64,000 nucleotides of DNA from Phallusia mammillata (GCA_965637545.1 OZ281498.1:13268001-13332000), one strand, 5' to 3'; positions 336 through 13,142 are shown, counted from the stretch's first letter. Notes: generated from the sequence alone by a model not told the origin. Program-made: numbers and translations.

Positions 336-2144
336 ATGAGGCCTTTTTATTTCGACGTATATGATACGTGCCTACAATGCTTGCTCATGTCACTCCTGGT
401 GAAATCTCAAACTACAGAATCCAGTTCAGCAAAAGACTCACAATTTCCCAGTGCCGATCCCACTGTTGCCTTGGAAGGACAATGTGTTGTTGTATGTGAC
501 GCTGTTAAATCACAAAGAGTTCAGACACAGGCAAATTTTGCCCAAACTCCACCCGCTGTAAGAAGGATAGCATTTTCGGTACAGAAAAATGCAAATTTGG
601 GACTGCCGCGCAATTCTAATGGAGGGGATGGTCCTGTTGTGGTAACATTTGATTACATGTTGCTAAACATCGGAAATGCCTTCGATTCTTCAAAAAGCAC
701 ATTTGTACCTTCCGTATCTGGCGTGTATTCGTTGGTTTTTAACATCTACAAGCTGTTCAATAGGGACCCCGTAACAGTGGCTCTAACGGTAAGCGGCAAT
801 ATTCATTTTGACTACAAACAAAACAATCCGATTTTTTGTAAGCAAGGAACAAAACTTGATTTGTAGGACATTTTTCTGGATTTGTAAAAAAATCATCTGT
901 GTTACTTTATAATGCCAAGAATCCGGTATAAAGGCGCTTAAATACGGTTTGTAAATACCAAACTTAAGCGCTAATGTACGATAAAATGTAAAGGCAAACA
1001 TACTCTTTTACAAACACTTGCAGTTGCACATTTCTCAAATAAATGACCTTTATTAGAGCTCTTTACGTATAGGTAGTCGCAACATCTTGTTAAGGTGTGT
1101 ATTTCATAAACATACTTTACTTGTCTAGACCCCCTAGATAATTAAAACTATAGTTCCGTTGAGGTAGAGCGGGGTAAATGCTCTATCAAATTTTAATTTG
1201 GGATTTAGGCGTCGCGTGTGAAAAGTTTCACATTACGAGACAGTGTTACCTGGCTCGCATTTTACCAGTTTAAAAATTCATGTGTCGTGGTTCATGTGCT
1301 GCAACCGGCAAACAAGCCTACAAACTCCCGTCGGTGATGTCATTTGAAATTGCTAGCTCGCATTGACTTAAAAACAATATATTTAGGATTAAGTTGAACC
1401 ACACATAGTATAGAGCGGTATCAGTTTTCTAATATAATGTTGCTTGAAGTGTATCGCAAAATTATCGAAGGTCAAAACGTTTGTGAAACTTTAATAAAAA
1501 CCAAATTGCCAGCGATGTAGAATGAAACGCTACTATTTAAGTCCGTGTCGTGTGTACCTAAGTTTGTGAAACGTTCATCAGAAAATCAGTGGTTTTGACA
1601 GTACGTTACAGTTAAGGCTCGCCATGTTGCTACACAAAACCTTGATATATTTAGGTTAATGGCATTCCAGAAGAGGTGCAATACCGAATTAAGCCAATCT
1701 TTAGGGAAATCAGACAAATTACACATATAGCCTAAAGCCTACACTAAAACACATTCTTTGGTGTCAAAAGAAGCATTCTCTTTAAAGTAGTTGAACATAT
1801 ATATACTCGACTTAGACAAACAACATGCGGCTGCAAAAAGCTGCTTGTTTAGCGAACTCGGCTCGAGGATTTCCATTAAGATTGACAAAAACACAGACGC
1901 CTAGTAGGCTACATGTCTAAATGTGTATTGATTCTTGTCTTGTGTTTCGCAGATCAATGGAGTCGTCCTGTTTACGGGGTTCGCCGATGATAAATCAACT
2001 CCACCACAACTCGCACACAATGGCGGCCTAGTCCATCTCGATGTAAACGACCGAGTTCGAATCGAGATCGTGAAGGGAAATTTGGATGGGGGTTGGCAGC
2101 ATTCCACATTCTCTGGACATTTAGTGTTTGAAGATCGTTATTGA
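336..2144 (+). CDS. Cerebellin-like secreted C1q-domain protein, 2 coding exons (336-788, 1953-2144)
   Basis: Phase-0 intron ACG|GTAAGC ... TTTCGCAG|ATC. Spliced protein has LEGQCVVVCD, IAFSV, FDYMLLNIGNAFD, GVYSLVF and KGNLDGGWQHSTFSGHLVF, matching Cbln1 motifs as recalled (LEGKCLVVCD ... GNLMGGWKYSTFSGFLVF). AATAAA near 2192 and 2340. Confidence 0.88.
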
Positions 2145-2714: not shown

Positions 2715-5700
2715 ATGTTATTCGCAATGTATAGAAAACTGTTGCAACGTATTAAAAAGAGCTACAAAGATGTCCAAGCGTCAGTCCGTTCATTACAAGC
2801 GCCTGGACGACAACCAACCGAAAAGCTTAAATACCATGATAACCAAGAAGCGAAAAGTTCGATTTGCGAAAAAAGGATACAAACGACTTACTTAAAAGTA
2901 CAGGATGCAGCTACGTCTTGTCAAAGTTTATGTGAGTGCTTCTTGTTTAACAGTACTTGAAGTCATTTGCAAAGGGCGTGTACAAATATTTCAGCAAAAT
3001 TGTACGTATTTCTGTACGGCTTCATTTTTTGAATAGATTCCAATGTATCAACGCCAAACACGGAAGACTCGTGGAAAACCTTGCTCTCAAGTCATAATTA
3101 TAAAAATTGGCTTAAAGTTGGAATGGCATTGAGGTATGAACCCCAAAATGGTGCTATAGTTGATCGATTTTAAACATTCCAATGGTCACTCAGTGCGGTT
3201 GAATAGTCAAGTTAGCAATGTTCTACAAAGGGCGTAAAAAAATAAAAATAAATGTGGGTTAAAAGTCGCATTGACGTTTCCGAAGTCTAGAAAGATATCG
3301 CTTTGGATAAACAGATCAATTGACGTGACAAAATAAGAAAACTTAGTTTTTTCGCAGAACTGCTTGTAATTACGTTTCGCCAGTCGTGGAACACATCGCC
3401 AAAATTATTCATTGCTCGTTGCTGGAAAAGTATGGTTCGCATGCTTCATTGCACAATTGGGAAAGGTAAGAAATGCGACCACCTAAAATGACCCTTTGAA
3501 ACAATTATTCCCACATATTTTTAGACGCGACCCTACTGCTTCTAAAAAATATACTTTTTAGAACTTTAGAGCGGGTTGATGCCAAACAAGATTTTAACAG
3601 TGGGTTGACAAATAACGTATGACGTCACAAACAAAATTAACCGTTTCGGGTCAAACAAAATTGTCATTAAATTATATTCTCGCAACAGTTTAAAGCCGTT
3701 TTAAAGTCTCATAGTTTAAGGCAGCAATACTCCTTTGAAACCTTTTTCAGGAATTTTGCATTCTGCATGAGCCTGCCCACATACACATGTCATGTAACTA
3801 AGCGATTTTCGTTTTTTGACAGCTCCATGTATTTACAATCTTCTTTATGAAAAAATTGAAGTGCATTTTTATGTAGAATGTAAAAAAAAACTATTATAGG
3901 GTATATATATACCAAAAAATGTTTTTTATTTCATCACAAAAAAAAAAAAAAACGGTTTGTTCGCACCCATGTATAAATATAACTTAACAAACTAATCCAA
4001 AGCCTTATTGTGGATGTTTTATCTAAAGGGCAGAGCATTTTTCAACATTTACTTGCTTTTGTGACTTAATATGTTTTTTGTTCAGTTTGTGACATCATAA
4101 ACACAAAATTGCTTTGCGAGGTATATCTCCTAATTTGCAATAGATTTGCATTGCACCCCCATGGGCTAAAGTCCAGCCGCTGAACAGAAACATTTTTGAC
4201 AACACTTCACAGATGAGAAAAAATGAAAATAAATCTCAATTAAACTTTGAAGCACTTGAATTGCTACATTTTGATTGGAAGTGTAAATAAAGCCCATTTT
4301 TAAAAATTTCCATTTAGATGTAGGGAGAAATGGATCAAAGACGTGTTTCTACTCCACAATCGCCCCCCTTCTAAATCCGCATTGTCACGAATTTGCAATG
4401 TCTCGGAGTGGCCAACGCCCCGAGGACAATGGGAAATTGCTAAGGTAAGGAAAAAAATTAAAGGTAAAGATCATTGCTTAAGTAGTATACCACAAACATT
4501 CTACCATTTTTCTCATACAGTGAACAATACACTGATAATGGATAAATAAGCTGTTGCTGCAAGGCATAGTCTAATAATTTATTAACAATTATTGCTCTTC
4601 CAGCAGATTTTTATCTGTAAAAGTAATTGGTTCGACGTCCCATACACTTCAAAAATTTGATTACTTTTTTAGGTTTTCATGGCAAACGGCTTTGACCCAG
4701 GTGGAACATCGGAGGGAGCATCCACGTTCGATGCCTCAGCACTCTTCAACTTTTTAATGCGATGTCGTCTTGTTAATGATTTTGTGGATAACTTTGATTA
4801 CGTCCGTGGCGTTTTGAAGGTAAAGGTTTAACGCTTTTTAAACAATGTCAGAAGTTGACACTGGTCACTTCAACGACTTATTTCTGGTTAATATAGACTT
4901 GTGTCAAGATCTGGTTGTGCAGAAATGTTTTTTTTTTTTTTCGAAAAACAACTTTTTTATCACTTAAGGCTGACAAGGAATTATTTACAAAGCACAGGGC
5001 AAAATTTGCATTAAAAGGCAGTGAAGTGATACCGTATTAATACCGTAAAATCGTAAGCCCGAAACTGGGGGCGTACCCGAAAACAAAACCAGTTGGGTCG
5101 GAAAGTTATTTTTTCTAAGTTGGAATTACGACACAAATGTGGAAGAATGTGATGCCAATGCAGTACGAAGCAACTGTCCAATGTGTTAAGGTTCGAAACA
5201 AAACGATGCACTGCCCGCGTTTCGAGTTTACTGACGAGGAAAGAGACGAACAGTTCGAGCACATTCTGGCCCTGTTTCAAGATGAAAGACTTAAATTTCA
5301 CGTCGATCAGTCACTTGACTCCTCAGCACTAATGAGAGATATTCTTGACGTAAGGCGCCCTCGTATCATATTTAACTTAAAGTGAAAAGACGCGGGTACA
5401 AAGTCCCGATTGGTTGTGATTAAACTTCACTACACAACTTGAAATTTGACCTTATATCGTCATAAAAAATTAATTTTGTGTACTGACCCAATGTGTTGCC
5501 GCAAAATATACCGTTTTCAAAGAAGCTCAGATTTCGCAAACCTATGAACTCTTTTTGTTGTTGTTATTAAGGGGTCTATAGGGGGCACTAGACATCGTTT
5601 GACGTGTGCAGACAAATAATCACTAATAAATACACTGATTTTACTAAACATTTTGTCAGATGTAGGTGTAAACCAGGGGTCGGCAACTTTTTTGGCACTG

Positions 5701-8700
5701 CGGACCGTTTTAAAACTGAAATTTTATAACGAACTGATCTTCAAAAAACAACAAATGTTCAGCAATGAAAAGTTATAACATCTCGTATAAGTTATTGCAA
5801 TTTGAAAGTTTACAGCCCGGTAACGAATTCCTTACCAACCAACATGGTTGCCGACCACTGACATAAACGGTGACCACAATTATAGGCGTTTTAAAGATGA
5901 CGCGTATTTTCTTCAGATTAAAACAGCTGATCTGACCATCAATGCTACAGCTCGATCGACGTTAGAAATTATTGATGGCAGAATTCTTGAGAGTCACGAA
6001 AGCGGTCTAAATCCGTCGGCTAAAACGACATCTTTAGAGGTTTGTGTGGACCGTCTGTATCTGCCCTGACCTTTTCGTCTATTCATAGAACATAGTGAAC
6101 GTTTATTATTTCTTGCAGTCGTTGAAAAAGGTCGCCTCGAAGATTCTATCTCCACCTTACGCCCAAGATGAAGCTAAGATGGTTCAGGTTTGTATATTTT
6201 GCCTAACACGTGTATAGTATATAAAGTATAGGCCTACCATAGTTCGTTGCATCAAAAAGGTAGACACACTGTTGAAACGAGAACGACAAACCTACTTTCG
6301 GGGTCAAAAGGAACAAACGCAAAATATATAGCTATTTTTTGGGCAATCAGATAATATTAAATTGTTTAGATGAAGTTTAACGTTCTGGAACTCATTTTAA
6401 ACAACAATTATTACAACTCACACTAAAAATACGTTTATTGTGCCACAAAACAGTAAGGTGAAAGGCGTATTTTTGCTGTTTGAAAGGCATAAGTGTCATA
6501 AGACATTTGGGCACTATATCAGGTCCTCGCAGGCCAATTTTTTGTTAAATAGAAGGACCTGCTGTCGTCTGAAAAGAGGACTGTTGGTGGGCCCAATGTA
6601 AAAGCTGTAAATAACAGTCCCCTAAACCGCGTATAAACAAGAAATGTTATTTTACTATTACATTATTCACGAGCCGTGATGATGTGTGGAATTAAGTTAT
6701 AATCATAACTTATGTTTTTTTCAATGTTTTGCATTGTGCCTGTTTGAAAAAATTTAATGGCAGATTTAGTGAAAGTCAATTGTGTTTAGTTGCAAAAAAG
6801 CCTTATATTGAATACTTTCTTCTTTTTCGTTTAGATTCCTGGACATCCAAACAAGAGACTTAAAACACTGGATTCCATCCTTAATGTACAGAAATGTAAG
6901 CTAACCTGTTTGCTATCGAAAAATTAACGTTCAAATTTCGAATAATATAGTTAATATTTATGTCATTTTATGCAGTGCTGGCAACCGGAGCAAAGGTTCC
7001 ATTTAGAAGTAAATCTGAAACGACAATTTCCTCACTAGTCAACAGTGGAATTTGGTCTCACATTTATCAAGCTTATCATTTTGCGTTTAATTCTGACAAA
7101 ACCACTTTATATCGACAATTCCACTCAGGACCCAATTCTTCAGTAACAACAAATAAACGCAAACACGAAAACGACGATGAAAACCAACCGTCTGGAAGCA
7201 AACCTAAAAGAAGGCGAGTCGACGAAGATACAGCTGAATGTGGATCAGTAAGTTTTGTCTTTTTTTGTGTATAAATGTTGTTAAACTGCAATGTATTGTT
7301 CCTGATGTTCAACTAAACATTATGAAAGATAATGTTAAACTACGTGCATTAGTTGATGTTATTAACTCCCTTATGACTTCAGAAGCATTAACAGTTGCCG
7401 CTCCGAATGACTCTGGCCGTCAAATCTTTTTACAGTCAATGAAAGTAAAACTTTTTATGGATTGTTGGTTGGGCGAAAATTGGGACAATTTGTAGAATAA
7501 TGTGCCGCTTGTTTTTTCAATGACTGAACTGAATAAAATCCGGTTACTTTTTAACTTATAAATCGAGTATTTAGGCAAATGTTAATCGCTGTGTTTAGCC
7601 ATCTTTTTTCATGGTAGTCTCGTAAAATGCGTCATTTACAAAGTTAAATGTGTGGGGACCCACGAATTTTTGCTTGCAGAAACAAAGTGGGATGTACAAA
7701 AACGAGTTAAAAACAAAATAAATTAGATAATAAATAAACTGTTAAGGTAAGCCATAGTATATGTGCAATGACAACATGTGCTTACCCTTGGCGTTTCTTA
7801 GTTGTCCTTTCAAATTTCGCATTAGGTAACACCATGCGAACGAGTTTAATTTTTAAATTATTATCGTTTTTCTTCATTCTAGAATCTAGACCAGTGGTTC
7901 CCAACCAGGGGGGATCTCCCCACTAGGGGGGAGTTTTGTAATTTGTATTTGTATCACAATAGTAATCTCTTACTGGTTGTCTGTGCTATGTGTTGTTGCT
8001 GCATTAAATTGCGCTTAAACAAAAAATTGCTAAACAGGAAAGAAAGAAAGGTGAAGGCGGATCTGGCGGTGGAGGAAACTATTCCTTGTATGAGGAAATG
8101 TTGAACAACTTTCTTATGTCCCAGGTCAGCGGAACTGAATTTTTAGAATTCTAGAACCATCATTAAAAATTTAACTTTATATTTGATGTGTTTAGACAAA
8201 AAACAAGGGCGCTTCGTACATACATGAAAAAGACAAACACGGAAAGTTTCTGGCCTCAGTTGATTTTGTCTCAAATTTTGCTATCATGGGAAAATACCCA
8301 AAAGAAACAATTCGAGATGCAGAACGCGAAGCTGCAGCAACGGTAACATAATTGAAAATTACCACTCAACTATTAAAATCCAAAACATATAAGCTTAATT
8401 TGCGATTCTGTGTACATTAAGTTCAATGCAATTTAGTGTTTTGTTATTGAAAATGTTTAATGTACAGCGAAAATTTGTTTGTGACCAGCAGTATATTGTT
8501 TAAGAAGATTATTAGTCACAATTTAGTTTAAACAGCACAGTTTAGTTTTGTTTTTGCTTGATTTATAGGCGTTGCAGAATCTCGGAATTAAGGTTTATAA
8601 CAAAGCTGAGGCGAAAGATTTGTTCGATACATATTGCAAAGCTGTTCCGAAAAAGTTACCGACGTACAAGACATACGAGGTCTCGACTTCGCCACACTTC

Positions 8701-10502
8701 ACCATTCTACAAATTTTCAACAACAGCACAATTTACTTTATCGAGGCTCTTGCAACAGACAAGATTTTTGTGCAAGTAAAACGATAGGTTTAAGTTAGTG
8801 ACGCACCGAAGTTTTGAAAATGCCGTTTTAGTTTTGCCCCAAAAGTTTAAAAAACAATGGATATTTCAATTGTTGCTTTTTGGTAGTGTCGGTAAATCAC
8901 TGGTTTTAATTGGTGCCGACGAGCTAGTGCAAATTTGAATTTGTCTGTAGATATGTTAAATGTATTAATAAAAAATACTTTATTTCCATTCGAGTTTCAC
9001 AAATTGCAGGCTAAATGTCGATTAACCGAAAGCAACGAGGATGACGCAGAAATCATTGTAGCAAAAATGGTTCTGGAAGAAGCCCGAATTGACACAGGAA
9101 AACTTGAAGACATTAAAGGCAATTGAAACTGTTATAAATTAATGCAAAAATGTTGTGATAATAAACAAGTTCGGAATAAGTGATTCAGGGACAATGGATA
9201 GATTTATAACTAACCTGTACCTGTACTTTTCAAACTACAAAAACTTTCACAACAAACACGTTTTTCAGGTGCTTTTACTGAATACTGTTTAAAGAACGGA
9301 GGTACCCTTCCAATTTACAACAACAAAGATGGTTTCGACATAAAAACCAATGAAAAATATCAGGAAAGCACAGCAACCTCGTTTATTCGAAACTGTCTTA
9401 CTGACAGGGCTGCATCTCCTGAGGAGTTGGCCGATTTAGAAGTTGACAGTGAAGTCGACTTTTACACTTCCGACCTTCATTATGCAGATCTATTTGAAAC
9501 AACCTCTGTGCTGGTGCGTGTGCTCATAGTGTTACATTTGACAATTGGCCCACGAGGGCCAGAGACAAACGCATTTACGTTGCAATTTTTATCGAACAGC
9601 CACAACGCAGTCGCCGAAAGTCAGAAGAGGCGGCATCACGCAATGCATTGGAGAAATATGGTTTTGATATTTCGCAATGTGAAGGCAGCAACTTTAAGTC
9701 GACGTTAAACGATTACTGCCAACAATGGGACTTTAGTCTCGCCTATCATACCTTTCAAGTAAGCCGCATCGAATTTTGCTGCAGTAAAAATAGCTCCGGT
9801 TGATTCATCGTTTTCTGGTCCAGTGCTCTTCAACATTTGGTTTGGTGAACCCTTAAAGTTGTTGTGACAAACTCATGCACCCTGTTTGGTCTCGACGTAC
9901 ATTAACGAGCAGCCGTATTTTTGATCAAAAACCTTTGACGTAAATTAACGTCAATCCGCACTCTGCGCAAAACGTCTTTTGCGTAGATATACGTCAACCG
10001 CACTAAAAGTGTTAGACATCAACATTTTTTTTAAATACAGAGGTTCATTTATACATCAGTTGAAACCTACACTTTTAATATACTGAAACTCAAATATTAA
10101 TAGTTCATTAAATGTTTGTGATGCACCCATGTATACCTTTTCGTACTGGTGCACCTCATGCATATTTTGGTGCACCATGCACACCAGTTGAAGAGCACTG
10201 GTCTAGGCATCCTTTTTGGGTGGTAGTACCTTTAAGAAGACAAAATACAAAGAAACAAAACGCCACGTCCACTGCGATCCTTATTCGACATTTAGTTAAG
10301 TTAACCGTCATGTTATTTGACACAGGTGAAGCCTCTCGTACGATACGCCAAACAATACGAGTGTGTCGTAGCAAGTCCAGCCTTGCGAGAAAGCAACCAA
10401 GAGTTTAGTGTTGCATGTGATCCAATAGGCTTTTCAACAGCCGGCGAGGCAAGAGAATCCGCAGCCAGAAACTCACTTGCCCTTCTTGGCCAACACACTT
10501 AA
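2715..10502 (+). CDS. CXorf38/DUF4559-like HEPN-domain protein with bipartite NLS and about three C-terminal dsRBD-like repeats
   Basis: Phase-compatible exons: ~2715-2931, 3038-3132, 3358-3465, 4318-4444, 4673-4819, 5191-5349, 5917-6039, 6119-6187, 6835-6895, 6976-7247, 8038-8124, 8196-8342, 8569-~8775, 9010-9118, 9269-9513, 10326-10502. N-terminal motifs NYKNWLKVG, CNVSEWP..QWEIAKVFM, FDASALFNFL and VRNKTMH parallel recalled CXorf38 motifs (EYKNWVKAG, WEVAKAFM, CDAVALLSLI, CRNEIMH). C-terminal helices DAEREAAATALQNLG, DAEIIVAKMVLE and EARESAARNSLALLG resemble dsRBD helix 2. Start codon and the 8569-9268 junctions are less certain. Confidence 0.78.
5674..5860. mobile_element. Degenerate hAT-type MITE in an intron
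   Basis: Ends CAGGGGTCGGCAAC / GTTGCCGACCACTG; flanks GTGTAAAC / ACATAAAC match only partly. Confidence 0.6.
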
Positions 10503-10960
10503 TTTACGACATTCTTACTCAGTACAAACAAGTAAAAGGCATTTTTTATTTTATTTTTGAACAACAAACGTATTGCACAAACAAATTTGAAAGTGACCAA
10601 AGTTAACCAAGCTTGTTCTAACAAAACATGTGATTTCGGTTCAAAACTTTTTTAACGTTGACTTCAAAATTTCAAACAAGATATATTTACAAAATAAAAT
10701 CCACTAACATACAGCAATGAAATGTAATATGCAATCGGTAATGACCAGTCTTATAAGCAAAAGATTGTACTGTGAGATGGTACTGTTTGTGCAACACATA
10801 CTTTCAATTCATTAAATTAATTTAAAATATCATGTGACCTTGCCTGAATGTACACTATAGATGTAGAACCAATATCGGCAACATAACAATAATAGACAAA
10901 ACACATTCATCATATTTGTAACACATATAACAAAATAATAAAAGTAAACAAGTTGAAAAA

Positions 10961-13142
10961 CTAGTCCAATTTCATTCTTTGTGTAGTCATGCGATATATG
11001 ATGCTATCCCTGCCTGGGTCCATGAACCAAATAAAATAGGAGGAACCAAGAACAGCAAGAGCAATTGCCACTGTAATCCATATAGCTATATTGATGTAGA
11101 TGGCATACTCAGCCATTACTGGCTCTTCAACAAAACCTTCCAAAACTTCTGCAACATCTGCTGTGGCCATTAGACTTCTTGTGCGACGTACTTGAAGAAA
11201 TTCGCGCTTAACTTCACCAGCAATGTTAACTTCGGCTAACAGTTGGTTGTCATACAATTTGTTGAAGCTTGCTGTAAACTAAAACAAAGAAGCCCTTTGA
11301 ATATCTGACCAAAATTGTATCAAGATTTGTACTTTAAAAAACTCTTAAGCAAAAAAATCTTGCAATCTTTGTTTTTATGCCTTATACTGTGGATGGAGGT
11401 TTAGATGTTTGTGAATGTGCATAAACATACACTAACACTGTTTGAAGGATAATTACCTCAGGAATAAACTTCTCCAAAAGTCGCAAGGCTTCTTTCACTT
11501 GACATGACTGTTCGCCATATGTCTTAACTAATGCATCAACACCACTGATTGTAAAATAATAACTGTCAGGCACTTGGTCGTCAACACTAGATTTATCAAT
11601 CTGCAACTGGAAATAACAAAATGTGAGAAATATGTTAAACAATAGTTAAGTGTACATCTTCAATCAAACCAACCAGAGACAGTATATCCTTCATGGTTTG
11701 AATTTCTCCAAGAAGCAAGACATCAGTTTCTTGAGTAACATTTAAACAAGATGCTGGATCCAAACTAGCTATAAAGGAATCAGCCTTGGCAAGGCGATCT
11801 TTCATGTCAAAAAAGGTTACTGGCAAATCATTCAAAACTCCAGTATTGTAAGAGAGGATATTGAAAACCTATAAATATGTCATTAGAACATTTGGAAATC
11901 GGGCATTACAGACAACCAATTCTGATTACATTTTGTTCTTGTTCAAAATCCACAATCACAGGTTTTTTCTCGGAACTTGCATGATAAATTGCAGCATTGG
12001 TTTCTTCAAGAGATGGTGCTGCTCCACCGGAGCCTTTTATTATGAACTTGGCTTTAAACTAAACACGAAATAAGTTTAAAAAGTGTAAGTTTATGTCCAC
12101 AAGTCCCCCTCTCCCCCAAAAAAATGTTTTTAACACAACAACAGTTCCAGAAAGAAAAAAGGTTTTGTGCAGTATGAGTTGTAAACTATTGGTTACGAAA
12201 CTTCAAACATTGCCTGTACACAGCTAATTTCAAACTGAAGAAAATTATGTGATATATACAGTAAACCTCAGTTATACCGGATTTGCTGTAGGTTTGCTGT
12301 ATTAAAGTGAGGTTTGTCGTATTAAATCAAACGTGAAACAACAAAGTGACTTACCTCAGTAACAGAAATGTCAGATGGGCTTGGAACATGCAAATTGATA
12401 AACAGGTTTGCTTTTGGGCGGTTGAATATGTCGAGTGCCTTAACACCTACACAAAAAATTCAATATGTGATTGTTAAGTTTTTCCACCAAATCCTCTTAT
12501 TTATTTGATATTAGAAGTCCTCTACTTTCTCACACTATATGTGTAGAACATCACTGTGCCGAATGTATGCTACTAAACTTAACATGAACACAAAAACTCC
12601 ATCATTCATGCAACAATAGTACTTTTAAACTACACTGCCTTTTTGGCATTAAACGTTGATCATATTCATAATCCAACCTTTTCCACACATAAAAAGGTAG
12701 CTTGTGTTCTAGGTTAAAGCACCTTAAAATAAAAGCTTTTATTGTTGTTTTAAAAATTGCTTGGTTAGAGAACATTTAATAAGCTGTATATATGACTATG
12801 AGGACTTTATTTATGAAACAATAGATCACAATTTTTACCAGTCCATGAAGTGATTTTGTGTGTTGAAAATCCCATCATGTAGCTAATCATGTGGCTAACA
12901 TCACCAACATCAATAGCTTCTCCATTCTTTGAAAGTTCAATGCTTGGAGGAACTGATAGAAAATATAAATCACCACGGCAGTGTGACAATAAACCTGAAA
13001 CAGTAATAAACACATTGTAAAACGGCAAACCAACTGTCTTCTGGAGTTATTGCCAAAGTGGTGATTTAACAACAAACAACATTAAACTAACGGAAAATAA
13101 CTTACCACAGAGGAATAACAATCCAGCTGATAGCGATTTCAT
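10961..13142 (-). CDS. ATP6AP2: (Pro)renin receptor / V-ATPase accessory protein 2, 7 coding exons
   Basis: Exons 13142-13106, 12994-12839, 12446-12355, 12058-11930, 11868-11674, ~11606-11457, 11278-10961. Signal peptide, DIFNRPKA motif, furin-type RRTR site, TM helix and tail MDPGRDSIIYRMTTQRMKLD. Confidence 0.95.

What the first reader, a model, noticed from the sequence alone, without database searches (positions are those of the whole stretch)
2715..10502. HEPN RNase-like domain fused to a dsRBD-like array: candidate single-protein dsRNA sensor and nuclease
Seen: the exons splice without frameshift into one ORF with an intact R-x4-H motif (RNKTMH, 5194-5211), a basic bipartite NLS (KRKH...KPKRRR, exon 6976-7247) and about three alpha-beta-beta-beta-alpha-like repeats (YEEMLNNF..DAEREAAATALQNLG; AKDLFDTYCK..LPTY..DAEIIVAKMVL; IKGAFTEYCLK..LPIY..EARESAARNSLALLG). 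Known: RxxxxH HEPN domains (RNase L/Ire1 KEN, Las1, Cas13, Csm6) are RNases activated by pairing of two HEPN domains; human CXorf38 is uncharacterised and, as recalled, has no dsRBD. Inference: dsRNA binding could pair and activate the HEPN domain, giving an OAS-independent, RNase L-like antiviral or anti-transposon effector, possibly nuclear. Caveats: I recall HEPN surveys mentioning CXorf38-like plus dsRBD fusions in some invertebrates, so the architecture may not be wholly new. The repeats also lack the canonical KK of helix 2 and may bind protein rather than RNA.
Basis: partly seen in the sequence, partly recalled or inferred. Interest (0 to 1): 0.9.

Follow-up and report, generated by a model that had tools for sequence, protein, structure and literature searches.

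The report
Sea-squirt CXorf38 HEPN–dsRBD fusion gene
This gene is a probable sea-squirt counterpart of the little-studied human gene CXorf38; it joins a predicted RNA-cutting (HEPN) domain to four double-stranded-RNA-binding-like domains, a combination described and proposed as antiviral in 2013 but still untested.

Summary
The observation largely holds. Seventeen exons (2715-10502) keep one frame (836 aa). Exons 2, 4, 5 and 6 match Pfam DUF4559 (CXorf38) in order, each below the family cut-off. RNKTMH is intact and kept as R-N-x-T-M-H in two relatives under purifying selection.

Two corrections: there are four dsRBD-like repeats, not three; and repeat 3 keeps the basic helix-2 motif (10/16 identical to E. 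coli RNase III), while repeats 1, 2 and 4 do not.

The architecture is not new. Anantharaman 2013 (PMC3710099) reports CXorf38-HEPN fused to dsRBDs in vertebrates, amphioxus and hemichordates, lists Ciona in the family, and proposes dsRNA or viral substrates. The gene lies tail-to-tail with ATP6AP2, a near neighbour of human CXorf38, which suggests orthology. The scan noted that same stretch before (s1-539820); I found no note of this fusion elsewhere in this genome, the only one the look-up covers.

Not shown: a transcript joining the 5' and 3' exons (three probable RNA runs had no exon contigs), the dsRBD fold, RNase activity or an immune role. Searches were exon by exon; the joined model was not searched or folded. 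Verdict: new member of a known, untested kind.

The parts
2715..2931 (+). Exon 1 (putative start ATG; basic N-terminus, no family match; start unverified)
   Evidence: no meaningful Pfam hit
3037..3133 (+). Exon 2, start of the CXorf38-type HEPN domain (YKNWLKVG at 3099-3122)
   Evidence: DUF4559 positions 2-17, E 0.055
3358..3465 (+). Exon 3, region where the family's zinc ribbon is expected; no CxxC here
   Evidence: no DUF4559 hit
4318..4444 (+). Exon 4, HEPN domain
   Evidence: DUF4559 72-108, E 0.061
4673..4819 (+). Exon 5, HEPN domain; Asp of FDASAL (4727-4744), 31 residues before the catalytic Arg, is the probable counterpart of human D134 (28 before R162)
   Evidence: DUF4559 110-142, E 0.0096; human numbering from bioRxiv 10.64898/2026.05.28.728550; equivalence inferred
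5191..5349 (+). Exon 6, HEPN catalytic exon
   Evidence: DUF4559 153-183, E 1.4e-4; 74% and 49% identical in L001 and L002
5194..5211 (+). R-phi-x3-H motif RNKTMH
   Evidence: R, N, T, M, H invariant in three species
5917..6039 (+). Exon 7, segment after the HEPN core
   Evidence: 75% identical in L001
6119..6187 (+). Exon 8
   Evidence: weak match in L001
6835..6895 (+). Exon 9
   Evidence: splice signals and phase only
6976..7247 (+). Exon 10, with bipartite NLS-like basic clusters at 7155-7166 and 7200-7217
   Evidence: NLS function inferred from consensus
8038..8124 (+). Exon 11, Gly linker and helix 1 of dsRBD-like repeat 1
   Evidence: repeat assignment by eye
8196..8342 (+). Exon 12, strands and helix 2 of repeat 1 (Ile-Arg where the basic pair is expected)
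   Evidence: helix-2 window rank 13 of 66,165, weak
8569..8775 (+). Exon 13, end of repeat 1 and helix 1 to strands of repeat 2
   Evidence: aligns with E. coli RNase III dsRBD residues 3-38, shuffle p 0.0075
9010..9118 (+). Exon 14, helix 2 of repeat 2 (acidic Glu-Asp in place of the basic pair); ends at a GC donor
   Evidence: not significant alone
9269..9513 (+). Exon 15, helix 1, strand 1 and a roughly 40-residue insert of repeat 3, acidic at 9415-9459
   Evidence: assignment by eye
9600..9758 (+). Exon 16, helix 2 of repeat 3 (basic motif kept, 9609-9656) and helix 1 of repeat 4
   Evidence: Pfam dsrm 49-65/66, E 0.17; 10/16 identical to E. coli RNase III helix 2, p 0.0005, best of 50,771 windows
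10326..10502 (+). Exon 17, strands and helix 2 of repeat 4 (Ala-Gly in place of the basic pair) and stop codon
   Evidence: aligns with RNase III dsRBD residues 33-71, p 0.013; low-confidence model reads strand-helix-strand-helix

Best explanation
[quoted passage not shown] Most likely working: the dsRBD array holds the protein on double-stranded or structured RNA. Repeat 3 is the best candidate binder; repeats 1, 2 and 4 lack the basic pair and probably serve as protein contacts or weak helpers. Two HEPN domains then pair into a composite site that cuts RNA without metal and leaves 2',3'-cyclic phosphates. Shown here: reading frame, family match, motif conservation, purifying selection on exon 6, dsRBD-like helices, neighbourhood. 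Inferred from known HEPN and dsRBD biology: pairing, cleavage, RNA binding, nuclear import. Whether the target is viral or transposon RNA or the cell's own structured RNA is open; I put a defence role at about even odds within this explanation.
For: Colinear DUF4559 hits. R-N-x-T-M-H kept in L001 and L002; against L001, synonymous sites are saturated and dN is 0.17. Only exons 13, 16 and 17 of 17 align to a real dsRBD at p<0.02, each with a part of the domain that fits the repeat layout; after allowing for 17 tests only exon 16 is clearly significant. The same fusion is published for vertebrates, amphioxus and hemichordates (PMC3710099). HEPN catalysis needs a dimer with a composite site. Exon 10 ends at a consensus donor in phase 0 and exon 11 begins in phase 0; the first in-frame ATG of exon 11 falls inside helix 1. 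Renin_r and RENR_N exons (ATP6AP2) lie tail-to-tail; the human order is ATP6AP2, MPC1L, CXorf38, MED14 (PMC4227166).
Against: No RNA contig over exons 5-17 in three probable RNA runs. No full-length relative could be fetched. Pfam dsrm is faint and in one exon only. Single-exon folds gave no dsRBD match. No repeat has a full GPxH loop, and repeat 3 carries a long acidic insert there. I found no report of RNase activity for any CXorf38 protein in the papers searched.
Confidence: 0.55

Rival explanations
1. One fused protein, but a housekeeping nuclear RNase that processes or turns over the cell's own structured RNAs, as Las1 or Ire1 do, with no switch-on by foreign dsRNA.
For: Single copy in this window; neighbourhood with ATP6AP2 apparently shared with humans; NLS-like signal.
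Against: Not detected in three probable RNA runs, one of which holds what is probably the neighbouring ATP6AP2 transcript. Family members are fused to NACHT and DEATH domains, and human CXorf38 is high in B and NK cells.
Confidence: 0.2
2. The dsRBD-like repeats bind proteins only (type B-like), and the HEPN domain is controlled by a partner protein, not by RNA.
For: Three of four repeats lack the basic pair; repeat 2 has acidic residues there; no GPxH loop.
Against: Repeat 3 keeps the helix-1 Glu and a helix 2 that is 10/16 identical to an RNA-binding dsRBD.
Confidence: 0.13
3. Exons 1-10 and 11-17 are two genes, or the main product is a HEPN-only form that ends in intron 10.
For: Three AATAAA in intron 10 (7532, 7717, 7729); no spliced read across the intron; DUF4559 covers 305 positions as a stand-alone family model.
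Against: Matching phase 0, consensus donor, no good initiator for the 3' group; published fusions in other deuterostomes. AATAAA is common in AT-rich introns.
Confidence: 0.09
4. A silent or decaying gene.
For: No exon contig in three probable RNA runs; no full-length product in the library searched with exon 6.
Against: Seventeen exons without a stop or frameshift; a second DNA run shows only three substitutions in exons 5-17, none a stop; strong constraint on exon 6. Contigs show presence, not absence.
Confidence: 0.03

Closest known systems
CXorf38 family of HEPN proteins (Pfam DUF4559 / PF15112; Swt1-like group in Anantharaman et al. 2013, PMC3710099)
   Same: HEPN domain matching DUF4559 in order, intact R-N-x3-H motif, fusion to dsRBD, deuterostome range (Ciona is listed for the family), neighbour ATP6AP2.
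   Different: Four diverged dsRBDs, only one with the basic helix-2 pair; no CxxC where the family's zinc ribbon is expected; an acidic insert in repeat 3. The passage read names vertebrates, cephalochordates and hemichordates, not tunicates, for the dsRBD fusion.
Human CXorf38 (RNEIMH motif, D134; bioRxiv 10.64898/2026.05.28.728550)
   Same: Motif type, probable Asp counterpart, gene neighbourhood.
   Different: The human protein is about 320 aa without dsRBDs (my own knowledge). Its activity is a computational proposal only.
RNase L / Ire1 KEN-domain RNases
   Same: HEPN-type RNase that works as a pair.
   Different: No ankyrin or kinase domain; a different HEPN family; activation by 2-5A or unfolded protein has no counterpart here.
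Multi-dsRBD proteins (TRBP/PACT, Staufen, Loquacious) and PKR
   Same: Tandem dsRBDs of mixed type A and B; PKR shows the logic of dsRBDs switching on an enzyme by pairing.
   Different: The attached enzyme is a HEPN domain; the repeats are far from the consensus.

Membership tests
CXorf38 / DUF4559 HEPN family | Sequence match to DUF4559 | tested here: met
   Four exons hit in order, profile 2-183; each below the 27-bit cut-off because scanned apart. Atlas lead DUF4559 at 0.76.
CXorf38 / DUF4559 HEPN family | R-phi-x3-H motif with polar residue after R | tested here: met
   RNKTMH; R, N, H invariant in three species; definition.
CXorf38 / DUF4559 HEPN family | Upstream acidic catalytic residue (human D134 or ExxxK/R) | tested here: inconclusive
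   Asp in exon 5 at similar spacing (31 vs 28 residues); an ExxxK in exon 3; no residue-level alignment to human was made.
CXorf38 / DUF4559 HEPN family | Zinc ribbon inserted in the HEPN domain (listed as a salient feature in PMC3710099 Table 1) | tested here: inconclusive
   Exon 3 has no CxxC and the stretch is about 17 residues shorter than profile 17-72. It looks lost, but an unrecognised exon in the 852-nt intron 3 is not excluded without RNA, and the paper does not say all members have it.
CXorf38 / DUF4559 HEPN family | Orthology with vertebrate CXorf38 | tested here: inconclusive
   Neighbourhood with ATP6AP2 fits; no tree, as no full-length kin could be fetched.
HEPN RNases | Dimer-dependent, metal-independent RNA cleavage | not testable with these tools
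   Needs purified protein.
dsRBD (Pfam dsrm) | Sequence match to dsRBD helices and strands | tested here: inconclusive
   Exon 16 is clear against E. coli RNase III dsRBD (p 0.0005); exons 13 and 17 are suggestive (p 0.0075, 0.013). Pfam dsrm only E 0.17, below cut-off. Introns split every repeat.
dsRBD (Pfam dsrm) | alpha-beta-beta-beta-alpha fold | tested here: inconclusive
   Only single exons could be folded (pLDDT 61 and 49); no structural match.
Type A (RNA-binding) dsRBD | Basic KKxAK-type motif at start of helix 2, in repeat 3 | tested here: met
   Arg-Arg-Lys aligned to the same motif in E. coli RNase III; definition PMC11309768.
Type A (RNA-binding) dsRBD | Basic KKxAK-type motif in repeats 1, 2 and 4 | tested here: not met
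   Ile-Arg, Glu-Asp and Ala-Gly at the two positions.
Type A (RNA-binding) dsRBD | GPxH loop between strands 1 and 2 | tested here: not met
   No GPxH in any repeat; repeats 1 and 2 keep a His in the loop; repeat 3 has a long insert.
RNase L / Ire1 (KEN) | Kinase or pseudokinase plus KEN domain | tested here: not met
   No such Pfam hit in any exon.

The most novel reading that the evidence does not exclude
The protein is a self-contained dsRNA-switched RNase. Repeat 3 reads long dsRNA, its acidic insert may lock it in the absence of RNA, and binding pairs the HEPN domains without OAS or a second messenger. If the neighbourhood shows true orthology, this would be the older form of CXorf38, whose dsRBDs were lost on the way to humans.
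Probability: 0.25. Interest if true: 0.75.

Novelty: new member of a known kind. Interest (0 to 1): 0.4.

Why it matters
CXorf38 is a predicted human RNase with no known substrate or trigger. A probable ortholog that carries its own dsRNA-binding arms would be a practical way to test the 2013 idea that this family cuts dsRNA in defence, and would add a candidate innate dsRNA effector for tunicates. The architecture and the hypothesis are already published, so the value lies in testability rather than in surprise.

Tried and rejected
RNA evidence: no RNA holder in the index. Contigs of three probable RNA runs lay only on intronic mobile elements and on the probable ATP6AP2 3' end; this is not proof of silence.

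Full-length relatives: the representative search with exon 6 gave two exon-sized ORFs plus four unrelated hits. Three word-based searches and two metagenome scans gave nothing; the length limits make these blanks uninformative.

dsRBD tests: PDB sequence searches with exons 12, 13, 16 and 17 gave only chance hits. The Atlas gave no usable hit for exon 13. Folds of single exons gave no match. Exon-to-exon comparison did not show the repeats significantly. Shorter sub-exon Pfam scans lost the dsrm hit. Eighty RNase III loci were too alike to build a profile.

Other: the figure of 1e-23 for 17 open segments is circular because I chose the exons, so it is not used. The exon after exon 8 in L002 is not significantly like exon 10. 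The supplement of PMC3710099 held no usable text. A hidden intron inside exon 15 (acceptor at 9488) would remove strand 2 of repeat 3 and was not adopted. The joined spliced model was not built, searched or folded.

Full report
Method note. The joined spliced protein was not built, searched or folded; repeats that cross exon borders were read by eye from the separate exon translations.

1. The observation. The region is AT-rich eukaryotic DNA with short introns. Other agents name the genome as the ascidian Phallusia mammillata; I did not test this. Seventeen exons between 2715 and 10502 have AG acceptors and GT donors (one GC donor after 9118), carry their phases correctly and hold no stop: 2511 nt, 836 residues. 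RNKTMH lies at 5194-5211 and the two basic clusters at 7155-7166 and 7200-7217. The start codon and exon 1 have no outside support.

2. The N-terminal domain. Scanned apart, exons 2, 4, 5 and 6 each hit Pfam DUF4559 (CXorf38), in order along the profile: 2-17, 72-108, 110-142 and 153-183. No single exon reaches the cut-off, but four ordered hits to one family are not chance. Exon 6 found two relatives, on a Logan contig (L001) and a marine metagenome contig (L002). Both keep the 159-nt exon, its phase and its splice sites, and R, N, T, M and H of the motif are invariant. Against L001, synonymous sites are saturated while dN is 0.17, so the exon is under purifying selection. Exons 7 and 8 follow in L001 in the same order. 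An Asp in exon 5 sits 31 residues before the Arg, close to the spacing of human D134, which a 2026 preprint proposes as the second catalytic residue. The zinc ribbon listed for the family appears to be missing: exon 3 has no CxxC.

3. The C-terminal array. There are four repeats, not three. Pfam dsrm touches exon 16 faintly at the helix-2 positions (E 0.17). I fetched a true dsRBD (E. coli RNase III) and compared it with all 17 exons against shuffles. Only exons 13, 16 and 17 scored p<0.02 (0.0075, 0.0005, 0.013), each with a part of the domain that fits the repeat layout; no HEPN exon did. With 17 tests, only exon 16 is clearly significant. Its helix 2 is 10/16 identical to that of RNase III and is the best of 50,771 six-frame windows, 49 against 27 for the next. 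By the published definition (helix-1 Glu, GPxH loop, KKxAK), repeat 3 keeps the Glu and the basic pair but has an insert of about 40 residues, partly acidic, in the loop. Repeats 1, 2 and 4 lack the pair. The fold is unproven: single exons gave poor models and no structural match.

4. One gene or two. Exon 10 ends at a consensus donor in phase 0, exon 11 starts in phase 0, and its first in-frame ATG lies inside helix 1. Against this, intron 10 holds three AATAAA and no RNA contig covers any of exons 5-17 in three probable RNA runs. One of those runs holds a 1503-nt contig that begins at 10554, probably the neighbouring ATP6AP2 message. I put a single gene at about 85-90%.

5. Neighbourhood. 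Exons on the minus strand from 10961 to about 13140 match Renin_r and RENR_N, i.e. ATP6AP2, tail-to-tail with this gene (lead from s1-539820). A human gene list gives the order ATP6AP2, MPC1L, CXorf38, MED14; the tail-to-tail orientation in humans is from my own knowledge. This favours orthology, but no tree was possible.

6. How it probably works. HEPN RNases cut RNA without metal at a composite site formed by two R-phi-x3-H motifs. The simplest reading is that the dsRBD array, mainly repeat 3, holds the protein on duplex or structured RNA and helps two HEPN domains pair. The preprint models human CXorf38 as blocked by a downstream helical bundle; exons 7-8, conserved in L001, lie where such a segment would be. 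All of these steps are inferred. A defence role and a housekeeping role are both open.

7. Comparison with what is known. Anantharaman et al. 2013 (PMC3710099) state that CXorf38-family proteins are fused to dsRBDs in vertebrates, cephalochordates and hemichordates, list Ciona in the family, call the family active, and suggest dsRNA substrates including viral replication intermediates. I found no experimental test of it. What this locus adds is a tunicate example with four repeats of mixed type, an apparent loss of the zinc ribbon, and a neighbourhood link to the human gene.

8. Verdict. A real gene model of a known but untested kind; interest 0.4. The most novel reading left open, a directly dsRNA-switched RNase that represents the older form of CXorf38, has about 25% probability.

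Noticed in passing
window 10961-13142, minus strand: ATP6AP2 / renin-receptor-like gene (Renin_r E 5.6e-21; RENR_N in three exons), tail-to-tail with the CXorf38-like gene.
   Followed up: partly
window 10503-10960: The two 3' UTRs abut or overlap. A 1503-nt contig of a probable RNA run, probably ATP6AP2, reaches 10554, while the first plus-strand AATAAA after the stop is at 10693. A variant signal near 10531 could avoid the overlap.
   Followed up: partly
window 336-2144, plus strand: C1q-domain (cerebellin-like) gene ending about 570 nt before the putative start codon.
   Followed up: partly
window 2715-2804: The first 30 residues are Arg/Lys-rich with one acidic residue, like a mitochondrial presequence; not tested, and the start codon is unverified.
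   Followed up: no
window 5674-5860, about 7886-8003, 9815-10206 and about 7648-7685: High-copy intronic elements; 5674-5860 and 9815-10206 have related terminal inverted repeats (MITE-like, probably hAT).
   Followed up: partly
window 9119-9268: GC-AG intron needed to keep the frame between exons 14 and 15.
   Followed up: partly
window 4695, 7009, 9689: A second DNA run differs at three exon positions, all changing the residue (Asp>Ala, Ser>Asn, Ser>Arg); too few to read as selection.
   Followed up: partly
L002 807-1109: The more distant relative has an open exon after the exon-8 counterpart that is not significantly like exon 10; it may be a paralog with another C-terminus.
   Followed up: partly
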